A stretch of 64,000 bases of DNA from Saccostrea cucullata (Eukaryota): assembly GCF_032062105.1 (NCBI RefSeq), contig NW_026927600.1, forward strand, positions 124,001 to 188,000, in the 5' to 3' direction. A program made the position numbers and the translations under genes. Position 1 is the stretch's first letter. Each line of letters opens with the position of its first letter. Below, piece by piece: positions 3,321-64,000 of the stretch. The notes under the pieces were generated by a model that did no database searches, was not told the origin of the DNA, and saw only the letters and a program-made list of their open reading frames with translations.

Positions 3321-3757
3321 NNNNNNNNNNNNNNNNNNNNNNNNNNNNNNNNNNNNNNNNNNNNNNNNNNNNNNNNNNNNNNNNNNNNNNNNNNNNNNNN
3401 NNNNNNNNNNNNNNNNNNNNNNNNNNNNNNNNNNNNNNNNNNNNNNNNNNNNNNNNNNNNNNNNNNNNNNNNNNNNNNNNNNNNNNNNNNNNNNNNNNNN
3501 NNNNNNNNNNNNNNNNNNNNNNNNNNNNNNNNNNNNNNNNNNNNNNNNNNNNNNNNNNNNNNNNNNNNNNNNNNNNNNNNNNNNNNNNNNNNNNNNNNNN
3601 NNNNNNNNNNNNNNNNNNNNNNNNNNNNNNNNNNNNNNNNNNNNNNNNNNNNNNNNNNNNNNNNNNNNNNNNNNNNNNNNNNNNNNNNNNNNNNNNNNNN
3701 NNNNNNNNNNNNNNNNNNNNNNNNNNNNNNNNNNNNNNNNNNNNNNNNNNNNNNNNN
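3321..3757. other. Assembly gap
   Basis: Run of N. Confidence 1.
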
Positions 3758-8151: not shown

Positions 8152-8283
8152 NNNNNNNNNNNNNNNNNNNNNNNNNNNNNNNNNNNNNNNNNNNNNNNNN
8201 NNNNNNNNNNNNNNNNNNNNNNNNNNNNNNNNNNNNNNNNNNNNNNNNNNNNNNNNNNNNNNNNNNNNNNNNNNNNNNNNNNN
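8152..8283. other. Assembly gap
   Basis: Run of N. Confidence 1.
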
Positions 8284-26200: not shown

Positions 26201-27841
26201 TTCATTGAGTCTATGAGTCTTTTTTTTTTTAAAAATATACCACCCACCCCGCCCCGGTTTTTTGATATTAGAGGGTATGAGAACTTTTTATTATAATTTT
26301 TATATTGATTCTTGCTTCTTGATTTCATGTTTTTTTAAAATTAAGTTATAAATTAAGTTATAAAGAATACAAGACCATGATGAAAACCTCCAAAAATATG
26401 CCATTGGTACCGTCTCAAATCACTAACCTTCAAAATAATCTTCGAACCCTGTTAGCACGACACGAATGTATTTAGACCACTGCATGATGGCAATTTTGCT
26501 TGTTTACAAATTAAAAGAATTAGTTGAAAAATAAACATTATTGGGCAGGCGGTATCTCATTTGCAGCGAGAGATCAAATTATTTATCAGATAGTGGCTGG
26601 AAACTGGAAAACAAGCACCCCGTGGATACAACAACACTAATTTACATTTTTAGCAATTTAATATTCTAGATGTTTATGCTTGTGCTGATTGCTACCGAGT
26701 GCATGTTAGACGCGGATCGTTCGTTTATGTTCTCGGGGTCTTCCCTCTAACATCTGTATGATTGAGAAAATTACATACTGGCGGAATCGAGCCATTTAGA
26801 TCGTTTAATTGCATATCTTCTCTTAGATTTGGAAAACGCGATTTTAAACGGTTAGGTGAGTTGCATGATACAGATCTATATAATTATTTGATATTAAATG
26901 AATGGCATTTTAATTTCTTTATAAGATTTTGTTCTTCTTAACCCTGCCATTAATGTTACGTGATGGATTGATCAGAAGCAGTTGGAACATTTTCTTGGAT
27001 GCAAGCTTTGTTTCATTAAATACATGTAAATATTTTTTTGCAATGATGTTTTCATCTCTGTTAATTAAATCATTTGTATTAAAATCAATGTAATAGTTCT
27101 GAATGCTGGTGTACTTTTGATATGTTGTTTGGTATAGTTGTAAACTTTGATTTATTGTATAATTTTGAAGTTGATTGGATTCTTTTCTTGGCGGTGGGAA
27201 TCTTTACATTTTTCTTCATTTTGAAATTTTTGCACAGTGAACCTACAGGCAAAATCGTCATAAACGTCAGATTCTACAGAATTAATGGCACCCTAAATTA
27301 CAGAAAGGTGTTAAATCGGCTATCTGTTTTTAAATAAATTTGGTAATCCACTGGCATGTTACAGAAAACATAGAAGCAAATCAGGTTAATGGCAAGAATC
27401 TGAAATGGTTCTCTCTGTTTTGAATTTTTTTTTTCATAAAACGCGCCTTGGGTGTAGGGACGTCGGGGTGGAGGGGGAGGGGGGATTGGGTCATATCTTA
27501 ACAGGGTGATATAACCAGTTCAGTAGATTTTTTCTGATGTCCACTGCATGCACAGTTAATTAGCATCCTTAATGAACACGTGTAGCTGATTATGCTATAC
27601 ACATGTGACTTACTGATATTTGGTTTAACCCCAGGGGGTATCGCTGTCCCTGTAGTAATGCATTTATTCTGATAGTTGTTCTTTGCAAGCCGTCTCAAAG
27701 TCTTCGGAGGAAGCAGATGTACGTACTTATTATCTATAGGCAATATCTCGGGAGGTCGTTGCCGAGCTAAATGTTCAATGAGTGTTTTTACCTAAATGTA
27801 ATATAAGAAATTTTGTTTCTTTTAGTTAAAAGTGGGCAACA

Positions 27842-55100: not shown

Positions 55101-58100
55101 ACACATAAAACTTCAGACACATAATTTCTAAGTTGTATGTAAAGTTAAATGATAAATCTGCACATCCACTGTGGTGTTTGTTCACACTTTTCCTTTTTCC
55201 AATCCATGGTAAATTCCTATGTTGTTTGTGCAATATCCCTTTTCAAACTCATTTTTAAAACAATTAGCAGCATTTTTAAGAGCACTTTTAGGGAAAGAAG
55301 TATTAATTTTGGTGTTTTGTGGAAATAATTTGGTTGGAATGATATTTTACAGTGGATAAGAAAGGACGTCGCCCATCAGAGATTGAAATGATGAAAAAAC
55401 AGCTGAAGAAAGTGCCAGGAAGCGACAGTGAAGATGAAAAGGTAAATTTCTCTGTCATGTTAGCTTGTAGAACTTTGGTGTTTTGAGGTTTATTTTTCTA
55501 GATACTGGTTCATGTTGAAGGAACCCTGTAAACTCTTTGATTATTCCAATAGTGGTAAGCTATTTGAATTGAGCATCAGGCAGATGTAGAAAGAATCCAA
55601 CCTCTATTGTTCTGGTAATGAATAAAGGTATTCCCTCCTACTCAGATCAAGGACCAAAAATGTCACACGAGATTTCTTAATTGAACCTTTTAATATGCAA
55701 TAAAAAATTGTTTTAGACCTACAAGAAAAAAACATAAGTTTGTACCTAATTATTTTGTTACAGTTCCGTTCATCTAGTGGCAATGCTGTTATTTATGAGG
55801 AAGATGAGGTATATTTAAAAAAGTCCCTTTAACAATTTCATTAATCCTTTTTAATCTTGAGATTATTCCTAGATGCTTCCACTTCACTTTGAACATTGAA
55901 GCTGCACCATAGTGAGTAACAAGTCATCCACCGGTTACAGAGGCTGCACAAGTTTACATCAAAATTATTTTTTGTTGTTTTTAGCAGCAACCTTTAATTT
56001 TGACATTCAGTTGTTAACCAAGTTCTTATTGAACATTACATGCAATATCATACTTGCCTTTGCACTTAGATTCTGTCAGAACTAATTATATAAGACATTG
56101 TTTTGCCAAATTTCACATTATTAACAGTTTGAATATCACGTCATACCCCTTATTTAGCAACAGCCCCAGGACAGCCTTGCAGAATGCTGAATTGATTCTA
56201 AGGAATAATTGTTTTGCTGATTATATTGTATTTATTACTGTAGAATTAGTTAATTATTTGTTGATTGAATTATCAGTGCCCCAGTAGAGGGCCTTCCAGA
56301 CGAAGCTCCCTGATCTCTGATGATCAGCCGTATTACCCCTCCTCACGCAAAGATATGTCACAACGCCGCTGGTCCAATGCCTCGACTGATTCACAAGGAG
56401 ACCCTTTTCATGTCGTTTTAAAACACAGAAAAACTGTTGATAAGGCAGGTCTTGTGTGACTGCATCCATTGCCCTAAGTTTGGGTGTGGTAGAGGAGTTG
56501 AGAACCTCATAATTCTACTACGTGAGACGTGCCTTTTAGAGGATTTTTTTTGCTGTGAAAGTCAAAATAATTTGGCAAGACTGTATAGGTTTTAGGAAGT
56601 GAACGATTAATTTTTGCTTCTGCTTACAAATCAATGCTGGTAGTATATAGTCTACAATGTTGCTTCATCAGTTGAAAAAAATAAGTGTCATATTAGTTAG
56701 TATTACATGTATGATATGCTTTCATGTTATAGGTAGATCTTCTGGTTTCTGGTTTTTAGATTGTATCAACTACATAAGATACATTCCTTCATTACAAATG
56801 GTTGATATAATGCTCTCTAAAGACCAGACATGAGGATGTACATACCATTAGAGTAAACGCTTCTCCCCTTAGCCGTAGTTAGATGAGTGTGTTAAGTTTG
56901 TCTGTGTGTGTGTTTTCATTAGGATAGAGGCAGTAGAAGACAGTCGGTTGAAACACTTGATATTCCAATTAAAAAACCATCAGCTGACAAACTGGAGGCT
57001 ATAGACCAAAAACGTAGATCCTCGATGAACCAGCGCAGAGCCTCTTTGGTAGAGCTCATTCCTGACTGGCCAACTCTTCAGCATAGGGAGGTCAAAAAAG
57101 AGGTATCAGACATGTGCAGTATAGCCTTAACAAAATATATATAACCTCTAGCTTACAATGCTTTTCTTAACTTTTTCTCAGATTCTTCTCTTTCCTTCAC
57201 TTATGCCTGAGCAAAACACCAGTTTTTAAAGATATATATACCCTTCAACCTTCTTTTATTTTAATGTTTATTTTCAGCAAGTTCCTATTCCAAAATTACT
57301 TTTTAATGATCATACACTTGCTTGAAAGAAATGAAACACATGCTTTCTCTGCACAAAACTCTTATTTGAAGATTCTTTAGTCTGAAAAACTTTTTGGTAG
57401 AAAACATTTATTTTTTTCAATGATTAAATAATAATCTGCACTTGCTTCAAAAGACCTAGAATTTCAGCCACCTTACAAGGTACTGTAAACCAAGAGATTT
57501 TTCTTTAGGATAGAAGCATGGTTTGAAGGTTTCTTAGCTTTAGCAAAAGTGTGGACTCAAATTTTAAGGCCAACTATAAAAAAAAGATTTGTTTGATGTA
57601 CTCTGCAAGAGTCTTCAAAATTGCCCCTATCCAATCAATTTTTAGCATTGAATTTTTTTTCAATGAAAATACAGATTTTCTCTATCATTAAAGTTTCGTT
57701 TATCATTTGCCCATCACACTTTTTAGATAAGTAGGATAAATCAGTTGTTTGTCAGGTGTTTAATGAAAACAGTAAATTTTAAAGACTGAATTTTGTATGA
57801 TCTTGAAAACCTGCCTATCCATCTTGAAAAATGAGGGTTAGAGTACATCAAACAAAATTTTATATAAATTTACGATGGCCTAAACAGTGAAAATATCTTT
57901 TATCTTTCTTCCTCAGCTATTTAAAAAAATAAGAAAAATATTTTGTCTACAGATTCATTCTATTTAAAGAGAAATACAATGTAGAAATTGAAGTAATTTT
58001 CATGATTTATTTATTAGATTATTTTTTACTAAAAAATAAAAGAGAATTCAGTGTTTTTTATGAAAACAAGTCCCAATTCAAACTTGTAAAGTTCTTGAAG

Positions 58101-59912
58101 TATAATATATTATTGTTATTATATAGGAACCAGACAAGTTTATCCAAGATCTGCAGGACATGAAAATCAAGGAAGGCACAAAGGAGTGCGTAATGCAGTG
58201 TGAATTCTGTAAACCTAATGCTAAAGTCAAATGGTTCAAAAATAAACTGGAGATCTTCAGTGGTCACAAGTATCACTTCAAAAACGAGGGCAACATCTAC
58301 AAACTGATACTTAACAATGTCAAACTGGAGGATGGAGGAAAGTACACTTTGGAATGTAACGGCGTCAAAACGTCCGCTTGGTTGTACGTGGAAGGTAGGT
58401 AATCCAGAGATAATGGAGATAATCATGTACGTGTATTAAATCCCTGGGGAAATTTGTTAAAAATTCTGTCCAGCGATATTTGCGCAGTATGAAAACAGCG
58501 CTTTATCTCCAGTACCCCCGCGCCCCAAATTCCCAGTCCCTTCCCAGACCCTACGTTTTATTCACACTTCGCTCCAATATTTCAGGTAAATTCAACCAGG
58601 ACTTCTTTATTCTTCTATACTTTTCTTTTCCTCTCTGGTTGATTTTGCATAATTATGTATCTACTGCATGATACATATTTATCTATGCATGAACTGCTTT
58701 TGAGAATACATCTTTTTACTGAGATGCATTGATTTCTTTAGCAGCGCTAGTATTAAGAGGGCAGTCCTTAGCAGCATTTTTAGACAATCTTGCTTGTGAA
58801 AACTAAAAATAGTCTTGTTATATAGGCAAATATGGGAATAAATGAATTCCAAAAAGTTCATTCAAATAATATCTTGGAACTTTTCTGCTTATAGTTTTGA
58901 ATTGTTGCATTTAAATCATTTTTCTTTAAGTTAATAGATATGAAATAAATACATTTTTCTACTTAAGCTTTGCGAATAGCTAGCTGTCTGTCCGTCTGTC
59001 TGTAAACAATTTTTCAAAATGCTACTCCTCCTACAGTTTTGGTCTAATTTCAATATTTGGCACACAAGTAGACTACACTAAGATACATAAATCTGTGTAT
59101 CGGTTTTTGATTTCGATGAACGGTGTTGCCATGGTTACTAAAAATAGAAATATCTGTAAAATTGTTTCAAAATGCTACTCCTCCTACAGTTTTGGTCTGG
59201 TTTCAATATAACTTGGCACACAAGTAGAATACACTAAGATACATAATTCTATATATCGAATTTTAATCTTGATGAACGGTGTTGCTGTGGTTACTAAAAA
59301 TAGAAATATCTGTAAAATTGTTTCAAAATGCTACTCCTCCTACAGTTTTGGTCTGATTTCAATATAACTTGGCACACAAGTATAAACATGCTACTCCTCC
59401 TACAGTTTTGGTCTGATTTCAATATAACTTGGCACACAAGTAGACTATACTAAGAACATAAAGAGACTTAATCAATGATCATTATTCTATTTATTGCTGT
59501 TGTAAATTTTCAAATCCCAGCTGCTTAAGTACTTTTCTCTTCCTTTGCTATAAGTTCAAACCAGTAGAGCTTCAGTCTCGACAGAGACTTCTGGTTCCGG
59601 AAAAGTAAATGTTTACGTATTATAGTGAAATTGTATTATTAAATGAACACCCATCTTTTAGCAGAATCTACAAGGTGTGTTTCAAGTTGCAACAATTACA
59701 GCTATGAGCAGAATTTTCTGGGATATTTTATTTCTGGTCAGTGTTTTGACTCAATTTTATGTATCATTGTAGCCAAGGAACCCGATTACTTCTTCACCCA
59801 GAAATTACCCGAAAAATACTCAGTCACCAGAAGGAAGGAAGCTGTCCTAGAGTGTTTCATCTCTGACCCCAGGGCAAAGGTCAAATGGTACCGCAATGGA
59901 GAACACATTGAT
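27842..59912 (+). CDS. unc-22: Twitchin (unc-22/projectin family giant muscle kinase), 5' part; gene continues past the window
   Basis: In-frame spliced chain of I-set Ig domains starting MGVGDDIAPRFTQKP, a PEVK-like region, the DYRNLL (DFRxxL-like) motif and RRASLVELIPDWPTLQHR, which resembles the mussel D1 site. Intron phases are consistent throughout. Confidence 0.95.
30935..30947 (+). CDS. unc-22: Twitchin 13-nt microexon (GSQKQ)
   Basis: Long pyrimidine tract + acag, gtgagt donor; bridges phase 1 to phase 2 as the frame requires. Confidence 0.85.
33090..33238 (+). CDS. unc-22: Twitchin exon, Ig2 N-half
   Basis: QDGIAPNFIQKP..ITWFKD; phase 2-1. Confidence 0.9.
33570..33725 (+). CDS. unc-22: Twitchin exon, Ig2 C-half
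   Basis: RIKIRTDP..DAGNYKVTAKNALGESNATIRLNFD; phase 1-1. Confidence 0.9.
34051..34362 (+). CDS. unc-22: Twitchin exon, Ig3
   Basis: PPKFTTKPTIRQ..DGGEYKAVAKNSLGE; phase 1-1. Confidence 0.92.
34673..34685 (+). CDS. unc-22: Twitchin 13-nt microexon (GKKPP)
   Basis: tttttcag acceptor, gtgagt donor; phase 1 to 2, required for frame. Confidence 0.85.
35243..35453 (+). CDS. unc-22: Twitchin exon, Ig4 N-part
   Basis: QGKAPHFLTKPTIKQ..YVATLTIK; phase 2-0. Confidence 0.92.
35540..35711. mobile_element. Degenerate Tc1/mariner-type MITE
   Basis: TA-CAGTCAAACTT left end; degenerate AAGTTCACTA-TA right end. Confidence 0.4.
41353..41443 (+). CDS. unc-22: Twitchin exon, Ig4 C-part
   Basis: DPKADDGGQYKATAVNELGESNATITLNFQ; phase 0-1. 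Confidence 0.92.
43351..43565 (+). CDS. unc-22: Twitchin exon, Ig5 N-part
   Basis: PPTFKEKPKVTQ..TLTWYKE..FYLDIM; phase 1-0. Confidence 0.92.
43821..43912 (+). CDS. unc-22: Twitchin exon, Ig5 C-part
   Basis: NFSAADSGNYKVIAKNDAGEG; phase 0-2. Confidence 0.92.
44365..46082. mobile_element. Non-autonomous TTAA-specific DNA transposon (Kolobok-like) in a twitchin intron
   Basis: TTAA at 44361-44364 and 46083-46086; TIR core AGCCATTCTCTGTAAC / GTTACAGAGAATGGCT; no transposase ORF; lacks piggyBac CC ends. Confidence 0.85.
46829..46971. mobile_element. TA-flanked MITE (Tc1/mariner type)
   Basis: TA-CTGTATACAGGG ... CCCTGTATACAG-TA. Confidence 0.75.
47020..47236 (+). CDS. unc-22: Twitchin exon, Ig6 N-part
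   Basis: PKESPPSIKDMP..AMWYFG..FLEIAN; phase 2-0. Confidence 0.92.
47474..47561 (+). CDS. unc-22: Twitchin exon, Ig6 C-part
   Basis: PTDADSGDYKCVIKNPSGE; phase 0-1. Confidence 0.92.
47659..47961 (+). CDS. unc-22: Twitchin exon, Ig7
   Basis: PANFSQKLAPKSV..VTWTKD..DSGEFKVEIKNQFG; phase 1-1. Confidence 0.92.
48400..48464 (+). CDS. unc-22: Twitchin PEVK-like exon (KKPEE x3)
   Basis: tacag acceptor, GAG|gtgact donor; phase 1-0. Confidence 0.85.
48626..48647 (+). CDS. unc-22: Twitchin 22-nt microexon (KKEEQQK)
   Basis: ttttgcag acceptor, G|gtaggc donor; phase 0-1. Confidence 0.8.
49200..49475 (+). CDS. unc-22: Twitchin PEVK-like tandem-repeat exon (PKAPEKPKEE x7 plus one partial)
   Basis: 30-nt repeat with third-position variation; first AG after a long pyrimidine tract; G|gtaaat donor; phase 1-1. 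Confidence 0.85.
49647..49712 (+). CDS. unc-22: Twitchin cassette exon (NKNSPRQIKPYQKKPTTILEE)
   Basis: caacag acceptor, G|gtaagt donor, 66 nt, phase 1-1, open frame. Confidence 0.7.
50792..50881 (+). CDS. unc-22: Twitchin acidic cassette exon (EVHGIVDSEEDGYEADDDKPEIPLIITND)
   Basis: GC-rich coding-like island, 90 nt, phase 1-1, G|gtaggt donor. Confidence 0.75.
51423..51439 (+). CDS. unc-22: Twitchin 17-nt microexon with GC donor (EGTPEK)
   Basis: Strong acceptor, AAG|gcaagt donor; the only element found that converts phase 1 to phase 0. Confidence 0.8.
51650..51782 (+). CDS. unc-22: Twitchin exon, linker and start of Ig8
   Basis: NGEYETQGPKRIVV..FKGKPSNQSVEE; phase 0-1. Confidence 0.88.
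51979..52221 (+). CDS. unc-22: Twitchin exon, Ig8
   Basis: NDISCKLDIEV..DEAKYTAILE..WSVFVK; phase 1-1. Confidence 0.9.
52380..52425 (+). CDS. unc-22: Twitchin exon with DFRxxL-like motif (DPKDSQLDYRNLLKHR)
   Basis: Phase 1-2; actin-binding-type motif known in twitchin/MLCK. Confidence 0.88.
52614..52672 (+). CDS. unc-22: Twitchin exon (DHKKNEKEEDDIDWGSLKP)
   Basis: Phase 2-1; canonical splice sites. Confidence 0.88.
53049..53057 (+). CDS. Candidate 9-nt twitchin microexon
   Basis: aatttcag acceptor, A|gtatgt donor, phase 1-1, inside a YGCY-rich tract. Confidence 0.4.
54049..54096 (+). CDS. Candidate twitchin cassette exon (GSNQQIPTLQSKPQTS)
   Basis: ttattcag acceptor, G|gtttgt donor, 48 nt, phase 1-1, open frame. 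Confidence 0.4.
55353..55441 (+). CDS. unc-22: Twitchin exon with RRPS PKA motif (VDKKGRRPSEIEMMKKQLKKVPGSDSEDEK)
   Basis: Phase 1-0, required for frame. Confidence 0.9.
55764..55808 (+). CDS. unc-22: Twitchin cassette exon (FRSSSGNAVIYEEDE)
   Basis: ttacag acceptor, GAG|gtatat donor, 45 nt, phase 0-0. Confidence 0.65.
56277..56444 (+). CDS. unc-22: Twitchin alternative D1-like exon (RRSS, RRWS; GC donor)
   Basis: 168-nt open frame, phase 0-0 if AAG|gcaggt is the donor; motif order parallels the D1 exon. Confidence 0.7.
56923..57102 (+). CDS. unc-22: Twitchin D1 phosphorylation-site exon (RRQS, RRSS, RRASLVELIPDWPTLQHR)
   Basis: 180 nt, phase 0-0; resembles the mussel D1 peptide RRPSLVDVIPDWP. 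Confidence 0.92.
58127..58394 (+). CDS. unc-22: Twitchin exon, Ig9
   Basis: EPDKFIQDLQDMKIKEG..VKWFKN..DGGKYTLEC; phase 0-1. Confidence 0.93.
58962..59596 (+). mobile_element. Helentron-like non-autonomous element with ~156-bp tandem repeats
   Basis: GTCT/GTCC microsatellite head; ATGCTACTCCTCCTACAGTTTTGGTCT recurs 4x; 3' hairpin AGTCTC..GAGACT. Confidence 0.7.
59773..59912 (+). CDS. unc-22: Twitchin exon, Ig10 N-half (last twitchin exon in window)
   Basis: KEPDYFFTQKLP..VKWYRNGEHID; the domain is incomplete and ends at a gtaagt donor, so the gene continues. Confidence 0.92.
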
Positions 59913-60864
59913 GTAAGTATCAGCCTAAAAATAGGACACTTCTACTTGAGTCTCTTTCTTTTGTTAGATATATAATTGACTTTGTATCTTATTATCTACA
60001 TTTATTATTTTCTGAAAGCTTCTTTGGACATCAGGTAAAAGGAGTGCAGAATTCATTCAATAATTTTCAAGAATTGAATTAAGAGTTGTTTTTTTTTTTA
60101 AGAAAGTGTGTATTTGTAATATCAGATGTAGTTTTTTTAGAAGATTTGTAAGGAATCTTCATATTCTTTCATTGTGTAAATGTAGAGAAAAATTATTAGA
60201 GAAAACCCAGATAAGGTAAGAAAAGTCACAAAATGCACACTCCCTCTCAAAGTAAACTAAGAGTCTCCTTATTAATGGACACTGCACAAAATTCTAAAAA
60301 TAACAGTCTCTTTGTAAGTTATCAATGTGCCTCTTTTGCACCAATCTATTCACATCTTGATGCTTGGTAAATCTCTTCCCATTTTATCTGGAATTTTTGG
60401 TATTTAGTAAGGAGGTTTTCCAAGCATAAAATGGATAGGTTGCCTTCTTAAACCAATTCCTTTTATTTAATACAATTCAAAATATTTCAAGCACTTTAAT
60501 ACAAGAACCTTTATGACTTCTTTTACAGTTCACATTATGATATAAATGTATAATTAAGCCTTTGTACCCAGCACTGTTTAAGTACATGTTCTTCTATCAG
60601 CTAACAGTTTATTTCACACTTCTGTTCTACTTATGATTTGTTTATTACTGCACAGGTGCAGGTAATCCCCTCCCTAAATTGTTGTAGTCAAGTTTTATTT
60701 AAGATTTCATTTGTTACATCTGCTTACTGTTTAATGTTGAAGTCTATCAGCCATACCAATTATCATTCCACATTGAAAACTACAAAAAATTTTTAATTGT
60801 CATTTTCTATTTTGTCTAAGTGTTTTTCTTGAGTAATTCTGCTTTTCTGAAAAAAAAAACATGC

Positions 60865-61496: not shown

Positions 61497-63722
61497 TCAA
61501 GGTTGAGCAGGTGTCTCTTGCCCAATGTCATCATCTGACCCAATGTAAATGAACTGTTTCCTGTTGTGATTAAATCGATCTGGACCCTTTAAGAAGGCCT
61601 GGGTCCTAGCCTTATGTGGTGGATCTACAGTGGTGGGAATGTGGTGGATGTCTGGAAAGGGAACCACACTGGAGTTCAAATTTTGTCCTTGCATTACAAT
61701 ATCACCTGCAGAATCTAAAAACTGGCTAGGCTCAAAGGACGGATTGGCTTGGAATTTTATGTGATGATGAAGTTTTGGGTTAGGTTTTTCAATGCCCATA
61801 CCACCAGGAAAGTGGGCTGGGGACAAGGCCTCAGCTCTGATGCTGCCACGCTGATATACATCCTGAAGGTTACGTCCAGAATTGAATACAAACAGCATTT
61901 CCTTAGCTTTTGGCAGGCGCTTCTTGATGCGTTTCCTGTGAGTTATTTTGTTTGTCTTGATCAGTCTATGAACAAAGAACCAGTACATGAACGTCAGCAT
62001 GCAGTTCACGCTGCCCTCAGGAATGTCTCTCCTGTTCTTCAGGGCTTTCTCAATATCAGAGGTCAAAGGTTTGATTGGAAGAATGACCTTGGTGACAAAC
62101 GAACTTCCAAGGACATTAAAAACCTCATATTCACTTCCTGTTTTGACAAAAATAGATGTTCTTATGCTAACTCCCGCATCATATAAGATGGCCGAGTCAT
62201 GTTCATGAAGTTCTTCTCCAGCTATTATAAGTCGACTTTGTCGCATATCAAAACCAGATTTTGCCTGAATTTTTTCTTTAAACTGACCAATAGTATGCAT
62301 CACCGAAGCATAAGTTTTGTAAATGACTCCATCAGGTGTGTGGACAAACACCGCAAACTCCTCAAGTTTTAAGGAGAGAGGTGTTTTAAGATCATATACT
62401 ACATTCTGAATAATACTGCTGTTTGGAAGCTTTTTATTTCCAATGAGAAGTTGATATTGCAAAGCATTTGGCACTCCAAAATGTTCTAGTTTCTTTTTGA
62501 TGCTCCTAACAGTCTTATTGGCTGCAACCTTTACATTTTCGATTATTCCATTTCCAAGACTTACCCTCAAGGGTACCCCAAACATGAGGTCCCCATCTAC
62601 ATGTGTCATGACAACATTCATGACAATAGGGGTACCTTTAGGGACTTCACCAATTGTTCTCATAAAATTCAGCAGCTCATTGTCCTTGTAAAGTTTAATG
62701 AAATCCACAGGAACATTAGTTAATCCATGCATCAGAAATGCTACCACTGACCATCGATCATATCTAGAAGCCTTGACTTCATATCTCTGTCCATTGTCCG
62801 TAACCACTGAAATGGCTTGTGATTTCATGTGATTTTGATGAACAACAGTAGAAAGTGAAAGTCTGTCTCCTGATTTGATGGCCATCCCAGCTAGGCAGTA
62901 ATCCCAAAGAACAAATCTGGATTTGTGACTCAGAACTAAAGTATGTAGAGGGATAAAGAATTCATGAACACCATCATATTCTCTGGGACCAGAGGGGCTA
63001 AATGTTCGACTGAACACATTGAGGACAACGTCAGTACCAGTGCTGCAGGGATCCACATAGAATCTGTAGGTAATCCCCCAGAATGTGTCTACATTGATCA
63101 ACAAATCAAAGTGAGCTTGAATCATCACATACAAGATGGACCTGTTCTTCACCCTGTATTCCAGTAGTCGGCGATTGTTCTCCAGGGCTTGGTCCATATA
63201 AAGCAGTTCTTGTCTGTCAATAGGAATCCCTCTCATCTTCCTGATGTGTTTTTTAAGACTGTACACTGTCATAGAAGGATGGACAGACAGGGTGAAATTT
63301 ACGTAAAGTTGAGCAATATCGATGGTCACATGATCACGACTCCGAGGGAAAATCATGACGACTGAACCAGGCCTGACGCTGTATACACTTTTAAGATCTA
63401 AGGGAGATAACTGCCCAGGAGTCAGCATCATCAGTTTGTGTTGGTGTCTCTCATAGCCGAGATTGTTCTGTGAATATTTCACTATCCGCGACATGAGGTT
63501 GGATTCTCCTGGAGGGAAGATTGCGATGCTGTCTGGTTTGAGGTAGCTCCAGACCGCGGTAGTCTGAGCTGAGGGACCCTTGGAGTTGAGGACGGGATAG
63601 ATGAGTTCATTCTTGTAGGTTTCTGACGAATCACTGGAGAAGGAAGATTCACTCTGGTCATCATCGTCAGGGTGTCTGGTGAAACCACTCAGGCCCTGGG
63701 GCTGTAACAGTACGGAGGATCC
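61497..63722 (-). CDS. Nested antisense gene: large terminal exon encoding a tandem multi-ubiquitin-like-domain protein
   Basis: ~740 uninterrupted codons in AT-rich DNA. UBL-pattern units at ORF aa ~134-203, 208-293, 304-373, 385-455 and 458-529. Acceptor ttttttctctttgaag ends at 63723, so the listed TTG start is not real. Confidence 0.85.
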   Translation of the reverse strand, partial: GSSVLLQPQGLSGFTRHPDDDDQSESSFSSDSSETYKNELIYPVLNSKGPSAQTTAVWSYLKPDSIAIFPPGESNLMSRIVKYSQNNLGYERHQHKLMMLTPGQLSPLDLKSVYSVRPGSVVMIFPRSRDHVTIDIAQLYVNFTLSVHPSMTVYSLKKHIRKMRGIPIDRQELLYMDQALENNRRLLEYRVKNRSILYVMIQAHFDLLINVDTFWGITYRFYVDPCSTGTDVVLNVFSRTFSPSGPREYDGVHEFFIPLHTLVLSHKSRFVLWDYCLAGMAIKSGDRLSLSTVVHQNHMKSQAISVVTDNGQRYEVKASRYDRWSVVAFLMHGLTNVPVDFIKLYKDNELLNFMRTIGEVPKGTPIVMNVVMTHVDGDLMFGVPLRVSLGNGIIENVKVAANKTVRSIKKKLEHFGVPNALQYQLLIGNKKLPNSSIIQNVVYDLKTPLSLKLEEFAVFVHTPDGVIYKTYASVMHTIGQFKEKIQAKSGFDMRQSRLIIAGEELHEHDSAILYDAGVSIRTSIFVKTGSEYEVFNVLGSSFVTKVILPIKPLTSDIEKALKNRRDIPEGSVNCMLTFMYWFFVHRLIKTNKITHRKRIKKRLPKAKEMLFVFNSGRNLQDVYQRGSIRAEALSPAHFPGGMGIEKPNPKLHHHIKFQANPSFEPSQFLDSAGDIVMQGQNLNSSVVPFPDIHHIPTTVDPPHKARTQAFLKGPDRFNHNRKQFIYIGSDDDIGQETPAQP

Positions 63723-64000
63723 CTTCAAAGAGAAAAAAATTTAAATTTTTCACAGAGCCTGAATTTTTTTTTCAATTAAAAAAAATATTGTATTTTTTAG
63801 ATATTTGAATTTTTTTCTTTTATGTTGAGATTTGTTACCTTTGGTGGTATGGTAGGTAAAATAATATCACTCTGTATCACAGGCTTCTCATAAAACTGGT
63901 CCATTATTCTTCACCAGAATACACAACATTAGCATGTGTCAGCATACACATCTGTTGATCAGATGATTGTTTTATGAAATATTTATTGAATTATTTCACT

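What the first reader, a model, noticed from the sequence alone, without database searches (positions are those of the whole stretch)
61497..63722. Nested antisense gene encoding a chain of divergent ubiquitin-like domains with no di-Gly, inside a twitchin intron
Seen: a 2.2-kb intact exon on the minus strand, inside an intron that splits twitchin Ig10. It encodes at least five ~70-85-aa units with the ubiquitin beta-grasp pattern, e.g. FTLSVHPSMTVYSLKKHIRKMRGIPIDRQELLYMDQALENNRRLLEYRVKNRSILYVMI and VFVHTPDG..TIGQFKEKIQAKSGFDMRQSRLIIAGEEL. Weaker units may lie at aa ~60-128 and ~533-570. It has an acidic/Ser N-terminal patch, a basic HRKRIKKRLPK stretch and a Pro-rich low-complexity tail. No unit ends in LRGG/GG. 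Known: polyubiquitin repeats are near-identical and cleaved after GG, while ISG15 and FAT10 have two UBLs and a terminal GG. Inference: this is neither. It may be a non-cleavable linear ubiquitin-chain mimic or scaffold (proteasome/p97 adaptor, DUB decoy or immune factor). Its position could couple its expression to, or oppose it with, twitchin transcription. I do not recognise the family.
Basis: partly seen in the sequence, partly recalled or inferred. Interest (0 to 1): 0.85.

Follow-up and report, generated by a model that had tools for sequence, protein, structure and literature searches.

The report
Seven-ubiquitin-fold gene nested in twitchin
A real, strongly conserved but unstudied mollusc gene sits backwards inside one intron of the giant muscle gene twitchin; it encodes a chain of seven different ubiquitin-like folds that is predicted to form one rigid body and cannot be cut into ubiquitin-like tags, and the gene has stayed in that same intron since before bivalves and snails diverged.

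Summary
Window 61497-63722 (-) is the large second exon of a two-exon gene (exon 1 at 63839-63904, 116-nt intron). It lies antisense in a host intron that splits one Ig domain of a titin-family, twitchin-like gene. With 49 relatives, AlphaFold gives mean pLDDT 89.8 and pTM 0.88 for the core: six complete beta-grasp units, then a seventh beta-beta-alpha unit ending in a long helix. None of 38 family members has a di-Gly at six of the seven unit boundaries or at its C-terminus. Each unit is conserved one-to-one, and dN/dS against Saccostrea echinata is 0.066. Collinear relatives, all annotated "uncharacterized", occur in bivalves, gastropods and one annelid. In nine of ten loci, including Haliotis and Biomphalaria, the gene lies antisense in the same host intron next to the same half-Ig exon. 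Only the annelid lacks this. It is not polyubiquitin, ISG15/FAT10, a transposon or a virus. The "linear ubiquitin-chain mimic" idea is weakly supported: global TM to linear tetra-ubiquitin is 0.14-0.20, and key recognition residues are replaced. It is most likely a rigid, non-conjugatable multi-UBL interaction platform with motif-bearing disordered tails. Its function and any coupling to twitchin expression are untested.

The parts
63839..63904 (-). Guest gene exon 1, coding part: ATG (A at -3, G at +4) plus 21 codons, ending AAG|gtaaca
   Evidence: Conserved 21/22 in S. echinata at L001:9449-9514 and 12/16 in oyster contig L008, while the L008 DNA between the exons does not align. The '..PPK|G' junction matches the N-terminus of P0003.
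63723..63838 (-). Guest gene intron, 116 nt (gtaaca ... tttttttctctttgaag)
   Evidence: Sequence read. There are in-frame stops immediately upstream of the big ORF. Relatives have gene spans longer than their CDS.
61497..63722 (-).
   Evidence: dN/dS is 0.066 against S. echinata over 741 codons.
63561..63722 (-). Disordered acidic/Ser-rich N-tail with a [YF]xx[ILV] motif 16 residues before invariant W60
   Evidence: pLDDT about 25. The motif sits at a fixed distance after a stretch of >=48% D/E/S in 22 of 38 members.
63345..63560 (-). U1, beta-grasp unit (ORF aa 57-128)
   Evidence: AF2 model: beta-beta-alpha-beta..beta, pLDDT 82-95. No Pfam hit. Only a weak in-register HH match to U6, 32%.
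63120..63335 (-). U2, canonical ubiquitin-like unit (aa 132-203)
   Evidence: PF00240 at 49.9 bits alone. PDB ubiquitin hits. The K27 and D52(N) equivalents are invariant.
62847..63104 (-). U3, beta-grasp unit with an inserted disordered loop (aa 209-294); it holds part of the most conserved block, aa 201-240 (T215, F216, W217, Y221)
   Evidence: HH match U2-U3 at 95%. Model. Conservation.
62613..62822 (-). U4, divergent beta-grasp unit (aa 303-372) holding the conserved D324, W326, H334 and P340
   Evidence: Model. HH matches only 25-41% but in register. Conservation.
62364..62579 (-). U5, ubiquitin-like unit (aa 384-455)
   Evidence: Weak TUG-UBL1/ubiquitin Pfam hits. HH match U2-U5 at 97%. 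Model.
62139..62360 (-). U6, ubiquitin-like unit (aa 457-530)
   Evidence: PF00240 at 27.6 bits. HH match U2-U6 at 96.6%. Model.
61959..62129 (-). U7, partial unit: beta-beta-alpha plus a long helix (aa 534-590) with invariant W583
   Evidence: Model. No HH similarity to the other units. Hydropathy is too low for a membrane helix.
61884..61958 (-). Basic cluster (aa 591-615, net charge +9), NLS-like
   Evidence: There are 6-11 K/R in 30 residues in bivalves and fewer in gastropods and distant members.
61500..61883 (-). Variable, disordered C-tail with short conserved islands
   Evidence: pLDDT below 35. Occupancy 0.6-0.8 and low conservation. Alignment.
59773..59912 (+). Host (twitchin-like) exon encoding only Ig strands A-C; the host intron holding the guest gene starts at 59913
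   Evidence: Acceptor ttgtag|CC and donor GAT|gtaagt, phase-compatible with the previous exon. I-set profile positions 3-41 of 90. Ortholog at 51-98% identity, next to the guest's 3' end, in nine loci.
58127..58399 (+). Host exon encoding one complete Ig (I-set) domain
   Evidence: Orthologs at 62-98% identity in the six named mollusc loci, 52% in L009 and 44% in L010. Closest solved relatives are titin, MyBP-C and obscurin Ig domains.

Best explanation
This is a functional, single-copy, two-exon protein-coding guest gene lying antisense inside one intron of a mollusc twitchin-like gene. The product has about 763 residues by the splice model (the joined sequence was not built). It has no signal peptide or membrane helix. 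Its core of about 535 residues is seven different beta-grasp (ubiquitin-fold) units joined by linkers of 1-11 residues and predicted to pack into one rigid body. The core is flanked by a disordered acidic/Ser-rich N-tail and by a basic cluster followed by a variable C-tail. Because no unit and no C-terminus carries a di-Gly, it cannot be processed into, or conjugated as, a ubiquitin-like modifier (shown). The array most likely arose from a ubiquitin-repeat gene whose units then diverged and became fixed one by one (inferred). It most likely works as a rigid protein-interaction platform, in the way the five-UBL HUBL region of USP7 serves as a docking surface. The short motifs in its tails would then recruit or localise partners: an acidic-[YF]xx[ILV] peptide of LIR/SIM type and an NLS-like basic cluster (inferred, unproven). 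The nesting arose before bivalves and gastropods diverged. It has been kept in the same Ig-splitting intron, most simply because a guest gene that fills much of an intron is hard to move without damaging host or guest. Regulatory coupling to twitchin is possible but not shown.
For: The gene is real and under selection:
- The ORF exists and has splice signals and a conserved exon 1.
- dN/dS is 0.066 with dS 0.43.
- There are 24 full-length bivalve orthologs at 42-94% identity.
- Collinear relatives occur in Haliotis, Biomphalaria, Babylonia and the annelid Dimorphilus.
- The core, aa 55-615, is fully occupied in all 38 aligned members.

Fold:
- Pfam ubiquitin hits and HH links between units.
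- AF2 mean pLDDT 89.8 and pTM 0.88, with six beta-grasp units plus a partial seventh.
- Foldseek top matches are linear tetra-ubiquitin (2e-21) and the USP7 HUBL (4e-15).

Not a modifier: none of 38 members has GG at six of the seven boundaries, and none ends in GG.

Fixed array: every unit is conserved at similar rates against each taxon.

Origin from repeats: the ORF aligns periodically with the generic poly-UBL protein P0184.

Tails: motif statistics are and charges.

Nesting:
- The guest is antisense inside a 4,666-5,047-aa gene in six named mollusc species. That gene is shown to be I-set-rich in four of them.
- Two unnamed assemblies have the flanking Ig exons on the opposite strand.
- The same flanking exons are present throughout.
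- The TIMP-in-synapsin pair is a precedent for passive deep conservation of an antisense guest (PMC2825198).
Against: - There is no expression, localisation or interaction evidence of any kind, so function rests on architecture alone.
- The rigidity claim rests on one AlphaFold model. I had no coordinates, so I could not inspect the interfaces or check whether the ubiquitin-type patches are buried.
- U1, U4 and U7 are beta-grasp (U7 only partly) by model alone, with weak or no sequence support.
- The LIR/SIM-type motif is short. It is absent from Mytilus, Pinctada and the most distant members.
- The basic cluster weakens outside bivalves.
- The host is called twitchin from its size, domain types, a PEVK-like stretch and an RRxS linker. 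No named hit supports the label, and the kinase domain lies outside the window.
Confidence: 0.6

Rival explanations
1. One reading: an uncleavable mimic of a linear (M1-linked) ubiquitin chain that engages ubiquitin-binding domains, the proteasome or p97, or acts as a decoy for deubiquitinases or immune sensors.
For: The best structural matches are linear tetra- and di-ubiquitin. U2 is 49.9 bits to Pfam ubiquitin. Hydrophobic I44, H68 and V70 equivalents are partly kept in U2 (L, H/Y, M/L). The units are head-to-tail with short linkers and no cleavage site.
Against: Global TM to tetra-ubiquitin is 0.14-0.20 at rmsd 27-33 A. The chain is predicted as one packed body (pTM 0.88), not an open chain. 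L8 is Q in 30/38 members, R42 is E/D in 37/38, and R72 is Q. Five of the seven units are invisible or sub-threshold to the ubiquitin profile. Each unit has its own conserved signature, which a generic mimic would not need.
Confidence: 0.12
2. A muscle protein functionally tied to twitchin. It would be either a mechanically stiff beta-grasp rod of the contractile apparatus or a proteostasis factor for thick-filament proteins. Its antisense position inside twitchin would enforce co-regulated or mutually exclusive transcription.
For: The position in the same Ig-splitting intron has been kept in nine of ten loci across bivalves, gastropods and two more distant assemblies. The guest's 3' end lies only 0.25-2.1 kb from the host half-Ig exon in most species. 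The predicted body is rigid and has a basic tail.
Against: There are no expression data. Deeply conserved antisense nesting is known without functional coupling (TIMP in synapsin, PMC2825198). The annelid relative is not nested. No literature links twitchin to a nested gene.
Confidence: 0.12
3. A precursor or conjugatable ubiquitin-like modifier, that is, a polyubiquitin-, ISG15- or FAT10-like protein.
For: It has ubiquitin-family domains in tandem. One ortholog is auto-named 'polyubiquitin-C-like'.
Against: No GG or RGG occurs at six of the seven unit boundaries in 38 members. One member has an incidental GG after U7, and no member ends in GG. The units are not near-identical: four of them are linked only at profile level. 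A long non-UBL tail follows the array.
Confidence: 0.02
4. A chance ORF, a pseudogene, or the cargo of a transposon or endogenous virus lodged in a long intron.
For: It is a large intronless-looking ORF inside an intron. Transposon-derived sequence occurs in the same intron in one distant species (RVT_1 ORF in L010).
Against: dN/dS is 0.066. Orthologs are single-copy in the same intron across mollusc classes. No transposon or viral Pfam domain is present. The viral fold library returns only generic ubiquitin folds. The splice structure is conserved.
Confidence: 0.01

Closest known systems
USP7/HAUSP C-terminal HUBL region (five tandem UBL domains; PDB 2ylm, 4z96, 5c56)
   Same: It is a covalent, uncleavable array of mutually divergent beta-grasp units without di-Gly that acts as a docking platform. 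It aligns over about 530 columns with Foldseek E 4e-15.
   Different: The HUBL is an appendage of a deubiquitinase catalytic domain and has five units. Here there are seven units and no catalytic domain. Global TM is only 0.14-0.15, and there is no sequence-level relationship.
Polyubiquitin (UBB/UBC) and linear M1-linked ubiquitin chains (PDB 7yui, 5b83)
   Same: Both are head-to-tail ubiquitin folds. They give the best Foldseek E-value (2e-21) and the best sequence hits for U2. Polyubiquitin is a likely evolutionary source.
   Different: Polyubiquitin repeats are near-identical 76-residue units ending in GG that are cleaved. Here the units are 57-86 residues long and are related only at profile or fold level. 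They are individually conserved, carry no GG, and are predicted to pack rigidly.
ISG15, FAT10 and the OASL tandem UBLs
   Same: All are divergent tandem UBLs encoded as one chain. They are structural hits at 1e-8 to 1e-9.
   Different: They have two units only. ISG15 and FAT10 end in a conjugatable GG, and no member of this family does.
TIMP genes nested antisense in synapsin introns (PMC2825198)
   Same: A guest gene in reverse orientation inside one intron of a large host gene, kept over several hundred million years and lost in a derived lineage (nematodes there, Dimorphilus here).
   Different: The genes are unrelated. Here the guest sits in the same host intron, splitting the same Ig domain, in every nested locus. 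The paper describes the TIMP guests as 'encoded by different introns', although their location in the synapsin protein is conserved.

Membership tests
Ubiquitin-fold (beta-grasp) domain, Pfam PF00240 | Sequence match above the Pfam gathering score | tested here: met
   U2 scores 49.9 bits and U6 27.6 bits against a cut-off of 25.4. U5 is below the cut-off (14.1 bits). U1, U3, U4 and U7 have no hit. U3 is linked to U2 by HH at 95%.
Ubiquitin-fold (beta-grasp) domain, Pfam PF00240 | beta-beta-alpha-beta-beta(-3-10)-beta topology | tested here: met
   Six units show this topology in a model with mean pLDDT 89.8. U7 has only beta-beta-alpha plus a long helix. Foldseek matches are to ubiquitin chains.
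Polyubiquitin (UBB/UBC type) | Near-identical 76-residue repeats | tested here: not met
   The units differ in length (57-86 aa) and are related only at profile level. Each has its own conserved signature.
Polyubiquitin (UBB/UBC type) | Each repeat ends in (LR)GG for cleavage | tested here: not met
   No GG or RGG occurs at six of the seven boundaries in 38 members. One member has an incidental GG (no RGG) after U7.
ISG15/FAT10-type linear UBL modifiers | Two UBLs and a C-terminal di-Gly available for conjugation | tested here: not met
   There are seven units. None of 38 members ends in GG, and a tail of about 150 residues follows the array.
USP7-type HUBL array | UBL array attached to a USP catalytic domain | tested here: not met
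   No peptidase or other catalytic Pfam domain is found in any part of the ORF. The fold match is at domain level only, TM 0.14-0.15.
Nested (host-guest) gene pair | The guest's coding exons lie wholly within one host intron, on the opposite strand | tested here: met
   The guest CDS 61497-63904 (-) lies after host exon 59773-59912 (+). The next host exon is beyond the window but is seen in S. echinata at L001:8299-8559. The guest's untranslated ends were not mapped.
Twitchin (host gene) | Giant (about 530 kDa) Ig/Fn3 protein with a PEVK-like stretch and an N-terminal PKA-site linker | tested here: met
   Host products are 4,666-5,047 aa, with I-set hits on record for four of the six. I-set exons are present in the window, and Fn3-like exons lie downstream in L001. 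A PEVK-like ORF lies at 49190-49627 and RRxS ORFs at 56265-57141. The description of Mytilus twitchin is in PMC12040844.
Twitchin (host gene) | MLCK-type kinase domain near the C-terminus | not testable with these tools
   The kinase region lies outside the window and outside the 10-kb flanks of the fetched loci. The host protein sequences were not returned by any tool.
Transposon or endogenous virus | Transposase, RT, integrase or capsid domain, terminal repeats, or multiple dispersed copies | tested here: not met
   No such Pfam domain is found. There is one syntenic copy per genome among the hits. The viral fold library gives only generic ubiquitin folds. Terminal repeats were not searched for.

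The most novel reading that the evidence does not exclude
An ancient host-guest gene pair, at least Cambrian in age, in which a rigid seven-ubiquitin-fold protein is functionally bound to twitchin. It would be either a previously unrecognised component or proteostasis adaptor of molluscan (catch) muscle thick filaments. Alternatively, antisense transcription through the Ig-splitting intron would set when and where twitchin, or particular twitchin isoforms, can be made. The packed seven-beta-grasp body would also be a new kind of multi-UBL architecture with no solved counterpart.
Probability: 0.12. Interest if true: 0.75.

Novelty: new variant of a known kind. Interest (0 to 1): 0.6.

Why it matters
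Multi-UBL proteins are known as cleavable precursors (polyubiquitin), two-unit modifiers (ISG15, FAT10) or appendages of enzymes (USP7). A free-standing chain of seven distinct ubiquitin folds, individually conserved and confidently predicted to be rigid, has no described counterpart. It is present across molluscs and is named only "uncharacterized protein" in databases. Its antisense position in the same Ig-splitting intron of twitchin, in bivalves, gastropods and two more distant assemblies, adds a clear invertebrate example of very deep host-guest gene conservation. It also gives a concrete, testable question: does a guest gene influence expression of the key regulator of molluscan catch muscle? 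In practical terms, it shows that at least one RefSeq model of the gene is truncated at the 5' end.

Tried and rejected
- **Intron at a domain boundary.** I first concluded that the host intron sits at an Ig-domain boundary. This was wrong. A 140-nt host exon at 59773-59912, encoding only half an Ig, lies between that exon and the guest.
- **First AlphaFold run.** The run with 17 sequences on the whole ORF was too poor to use (mean pLDDT 49.9). It was replaced by the core-only run with 49 sequences.
- **Membrane anchor.** Rejected for the hydrophobic stretch at aa 571-589. The best 19-residue hydropathy is 1.33 and lies elsewhere, and the stretch is modelled as a helix of U7.
- **P0184.** Rejected as a long family member. 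It aligns in several shifted registers, so it is a generic poly-UBL.
- **Word-indexed profile search.** The search with A2 added no new named taxa.
- **Look-ups.** Those for the Mya and Dreissena orthologs were not on record.
- **Logan contig L008.** It turned out to be genomic or unspliced, so it gives no transcript evidence.
- **Literature.** Six searches (twitchin with nested gene, tandem UBL domains in molluscs, LOC identifiers, protein accessions, twitchin with DFRXXL) found nothing on this gene.
- **Cys-His-Asp site.** The idea rests on conserved C278, H334 and D324.
- **Joined product.** The joined exon 1 + exon 2 product was neither built nor searched. Each exon was handled by reference on its own.
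Full report
**1. The observation**

The window holds a 743-codon open frame on the minus strand, 61497..63728. It has no ATG before codon 79, and stops lie immediately upstream in frame. The DNA explains this. About 116 nt upstream, a 22-codon ORF runs from 63904 to 63839. It starts with an ATG in a good context and ends in AAG|gtaaca.

That small exon is 21/22 identical at the expected place in Saccostrea echinata and 12/16 identical in a third oyster contig. In that contig the DNA between the two exons does not align. The gene therefore has two coding exons, and the product has about 763 residues. I did not build or search the joined product. Residue numbers below are ORF numbers, counted from 63728.

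**2. The gene is real**

The ORF has 24 full-length relatives, at 42-94% identity, in oysters, scallops, mussels, pearl oyster, unionids, Dreissena and Mya. The 94% match to S. echinata suggests the window is from a Saccostrea species.

An exhaustive phmmer search used the part without the canonical ubiquitin unit, against 1.84 billion representatives. It added collinear, single-stretch relatives of similar length, down to about 20% identity. The named ones are from Haliotis, Biomphalaria and Babylonia, and from the annelid Dimorphilus gyrociliatus. All are annotated only as "uncharacterized" or "ubiquitin-like domain-containing".

In a 38-member alignment, residues 55-615 are occupied in every member, while both tails are variable. 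Against S. echinata, dN/dS is 0.066 with dS 0.43 over 741 codons. There is no transposon or viral domain. The viral fold library returns only generic ubiquitin folds. Six literature searches found nothing on the gene.

**3. What it encodes**

- **Sequence level.** Pfam's ubiquitin model passes its cut-off for U2 (aa 132-203, 49.9 bits alone) and U6 (27.6 bits). It is weak for U5 and silent elsewhere.
- **Profile level.** I sliced the family alignment into seven units and compared them with HH-suite. U2, U3, U5 and U6 are linked at 91-97% probability. U4 and U1 give only weak, in-register matches (25-41%). U7 gives none.
- **Structure.** The first AlphaFold run (17 sequences, whole ORF) was poor, with mean pLDDT 49.9. 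A second run on the core, with 49 sequences, gave mean pLDDT 89.8 and pTM 0.88.
- **Units in the model.** Six units have the complete beta-grasp pattern: U1 57-128, U2 132-203, U3 209-294 (with a disordered inserted loop), U4 303-372, U5 384-455 and U6 457-530. The seventh, U7 534-590, has two strands, a helix and then a long helix.
- **Rigidity.** Linkers are 1-11 residues. A pTM of 0.88 over 566 residues means the relative positions of the units are confidently predicted. The chain is modelled as one packed body, not as beads on a string.
- **Fold search.** Foldseek against the PDB confirms the fold: linear tetra-ubiquitin at 2e-21 and the USP7 HUBL at 4e-15. The global TM-scores of 0.14-0.20 show that the arrangement has no solved counterpart.
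- **Limit.** I could not read the coordinates, so the interfaces themselves are unexamined.

**4. Not a modifier, and not a faithful ubiquitin mimic**

Across 38 members there is no GG or RGG at six of the seven unit boundaries. One member has an incidental GG after U7, and none ends in GG.

Every unit is conserved one-to-one at similar rates against each taxon: 52-65% against scallop for U1-U6, and 16-24% against the annelid (U7 is 35% and 10%). This is the opposite of the concerted evolution seen in polyubiquitin.

In U2 the structural K27 and D52(N) equivalents are invariant and I44 is mostly L. But L8 is Q in 30/38 members, R42 is E/D in 37/38, R72 is Q, and G75-G76 is F-D.

The most conserved blocks are aa 201-240 (the end of U2 and the start of U3) and aa 321-340 (U4). 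They hold T215, F216, W217, Y221, D324, W326 and H334, which are not ubiquitin features. The ORF aligns periodically, in several registers, with a generic 1683-aa poly-UBL protein. That fits an origin from a repeat array.

**5. The tails**

- **N-tail.** It is disordered and rich in D, E and S. In 22 of 38 members (most bivalves and several gastropods), a [YF]xx[ILV] motif sits about 16 residues before the invariant W60. It follows a stretch that is at least 48% D/E/S. This is the signature of an LIR- or SIM-type peptide, but that reading is inference only.
- **After U7.** A basic cluster follows, with net charge +9 over 25 residues. It is strong in bivalves and weaker elsewhere.
- **Hydrophobic stretch.** The stretch before the basic cluster is modelled as a helix of U7. 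It is too weakly hydrophobic for a membrane span.

**6. The host and the nesting**

The plus strand carries I-set exons at 27830, 33061, 34044, 35172, 41353, 43344, 47637, 51957 and 58127. The closest solved relatives of the Ig exon at 58127-58399 are Ig domains of titin, MyBP-C and obscurin. The plus strand also carries a PEVK-like ORF at 49190-49627 and RRxS-bearing ORFs at 56265-57141.

The annotated host products in other molluscs are 4,666-5,047 aa, and I-set hits are on record for four of the six. This matches the published description of Mytilus twitchin: 530 kDa, 24 Ig, 15 FnIII, a PEVK-like domain, and PKA site D1 between Ig7 and Ig8 (PMC12040844). The kinase domain lies outside the window, and no named hit was obtained. 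So "twitchin" is well supported but not proven.

I first thought the intron lay at a domain boundary. That was wrong. A 140-nt host exon at 59773..59912 encodes only I-set profile positions 3-41, and the far-side exon in S. echinata encodes positions 46-90. By exon count it is Ig9-10. By the D1 landmark it would be Ig9.

The guest gene lies antisense in this same intron in the following:
- Saccostrea echinata, Pecten, Mytilus and Potamilus (bivalves);
- Haliotis and Biomphalaria (gastropods);
- two more distant, unnamed assemblies.

In every one of these loci the orthologous half-Ig exon lies 0.25-6.7 kb beyond the guest's 3' end. Its identity is 51-98%, against about 40% for paralogous Ig repeats. 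Only the compact genome of Dimorphilus lacks the nesting.

The arrangement therefore predates the bivalve-gastropod divergence, which from general knowledge dates to the Cambrian. The TIMP-in-synapsin pair shows that such nesting can persist across Metazoa (PMC2825198). Conservation of position alone does not prove regulatory coupling.

**7. Verdict**

The gene is a conserved, uncharacterised lophotrochozoan family: a free-standing, non-conjugatable chain of seven ubiquitin folds that is predicted to be rigid. The closest functional analogy is a UBL docking platform such as the USP7 HUBL. The gene is an ancient antisense guest of a twitchin-like gene. Its function and expression are unknown.

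The N runs (3321-3757 and 8152-8283) were left as they are. No virus of animals was fetched. No step needed referral.

Noticed in passing
window 58999-59382: A 156-bp tandem repeat (2.5 copies, 91% matches), with a nested 60-bp period, lies in the host intron between the complete Ig exon and the half-Ig exon.
   Followed up: no
window 49190-49627 (+); 56265-56456 and 56923-57141 (+): A P/E/V/K-rich ORF and two linker ORFs with RRxS sites lie just before the Ig exon at 58127. They fit the PEVK-like domain and the D1 PKA site described for Mytilus twitchin (PMC12040844). Exon boundaries were not worked out.
   Followed up: partly
L001:9449-9514 and L001:10001-11932: The RefSeq model of the S. 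echinata ortholog (643 aa) starts at an internal Met. It omits the conserved exon 1 and the first half of unit U1, so it looks 5'-truncated.
   Followed up: partly
L010:16977-18272: In an unnamed ENA assembly, a reverse-transcriptase (RVT_1) ORF is inserted in the host intron between the guest gene and the half-Ig exon. This stretches the gap to 6.7 kb.
   Followed up: no
window 44506-44877 (+): A sub-threshold Pfam match to Baculo_PP31 (E 0.008, 16 bits against a cut-off of 25) on an open frame in a host intron. It is most likely chance.
   Followed up: no
proteins P0034-P0170: More than a hundred proteins with 3-11 divergent UBL repeats (400-2400 aa) match units U5-U6. The few I looked up are from a fish, a rotifer, a sea cucumber and metagenomes. 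Divergent poly-UBL arrays seem widespread and little described.
   Followed up: partly
window 61749-62186 (+): A 145-codon ORF lies antisense to the guest's exon 2. It is a mechanical ORF with nothing to support it.
   Followed up: no
window 3321-3757 and 8152-8283: Runs of N (assembly gaps or masked).
   Followed up: no
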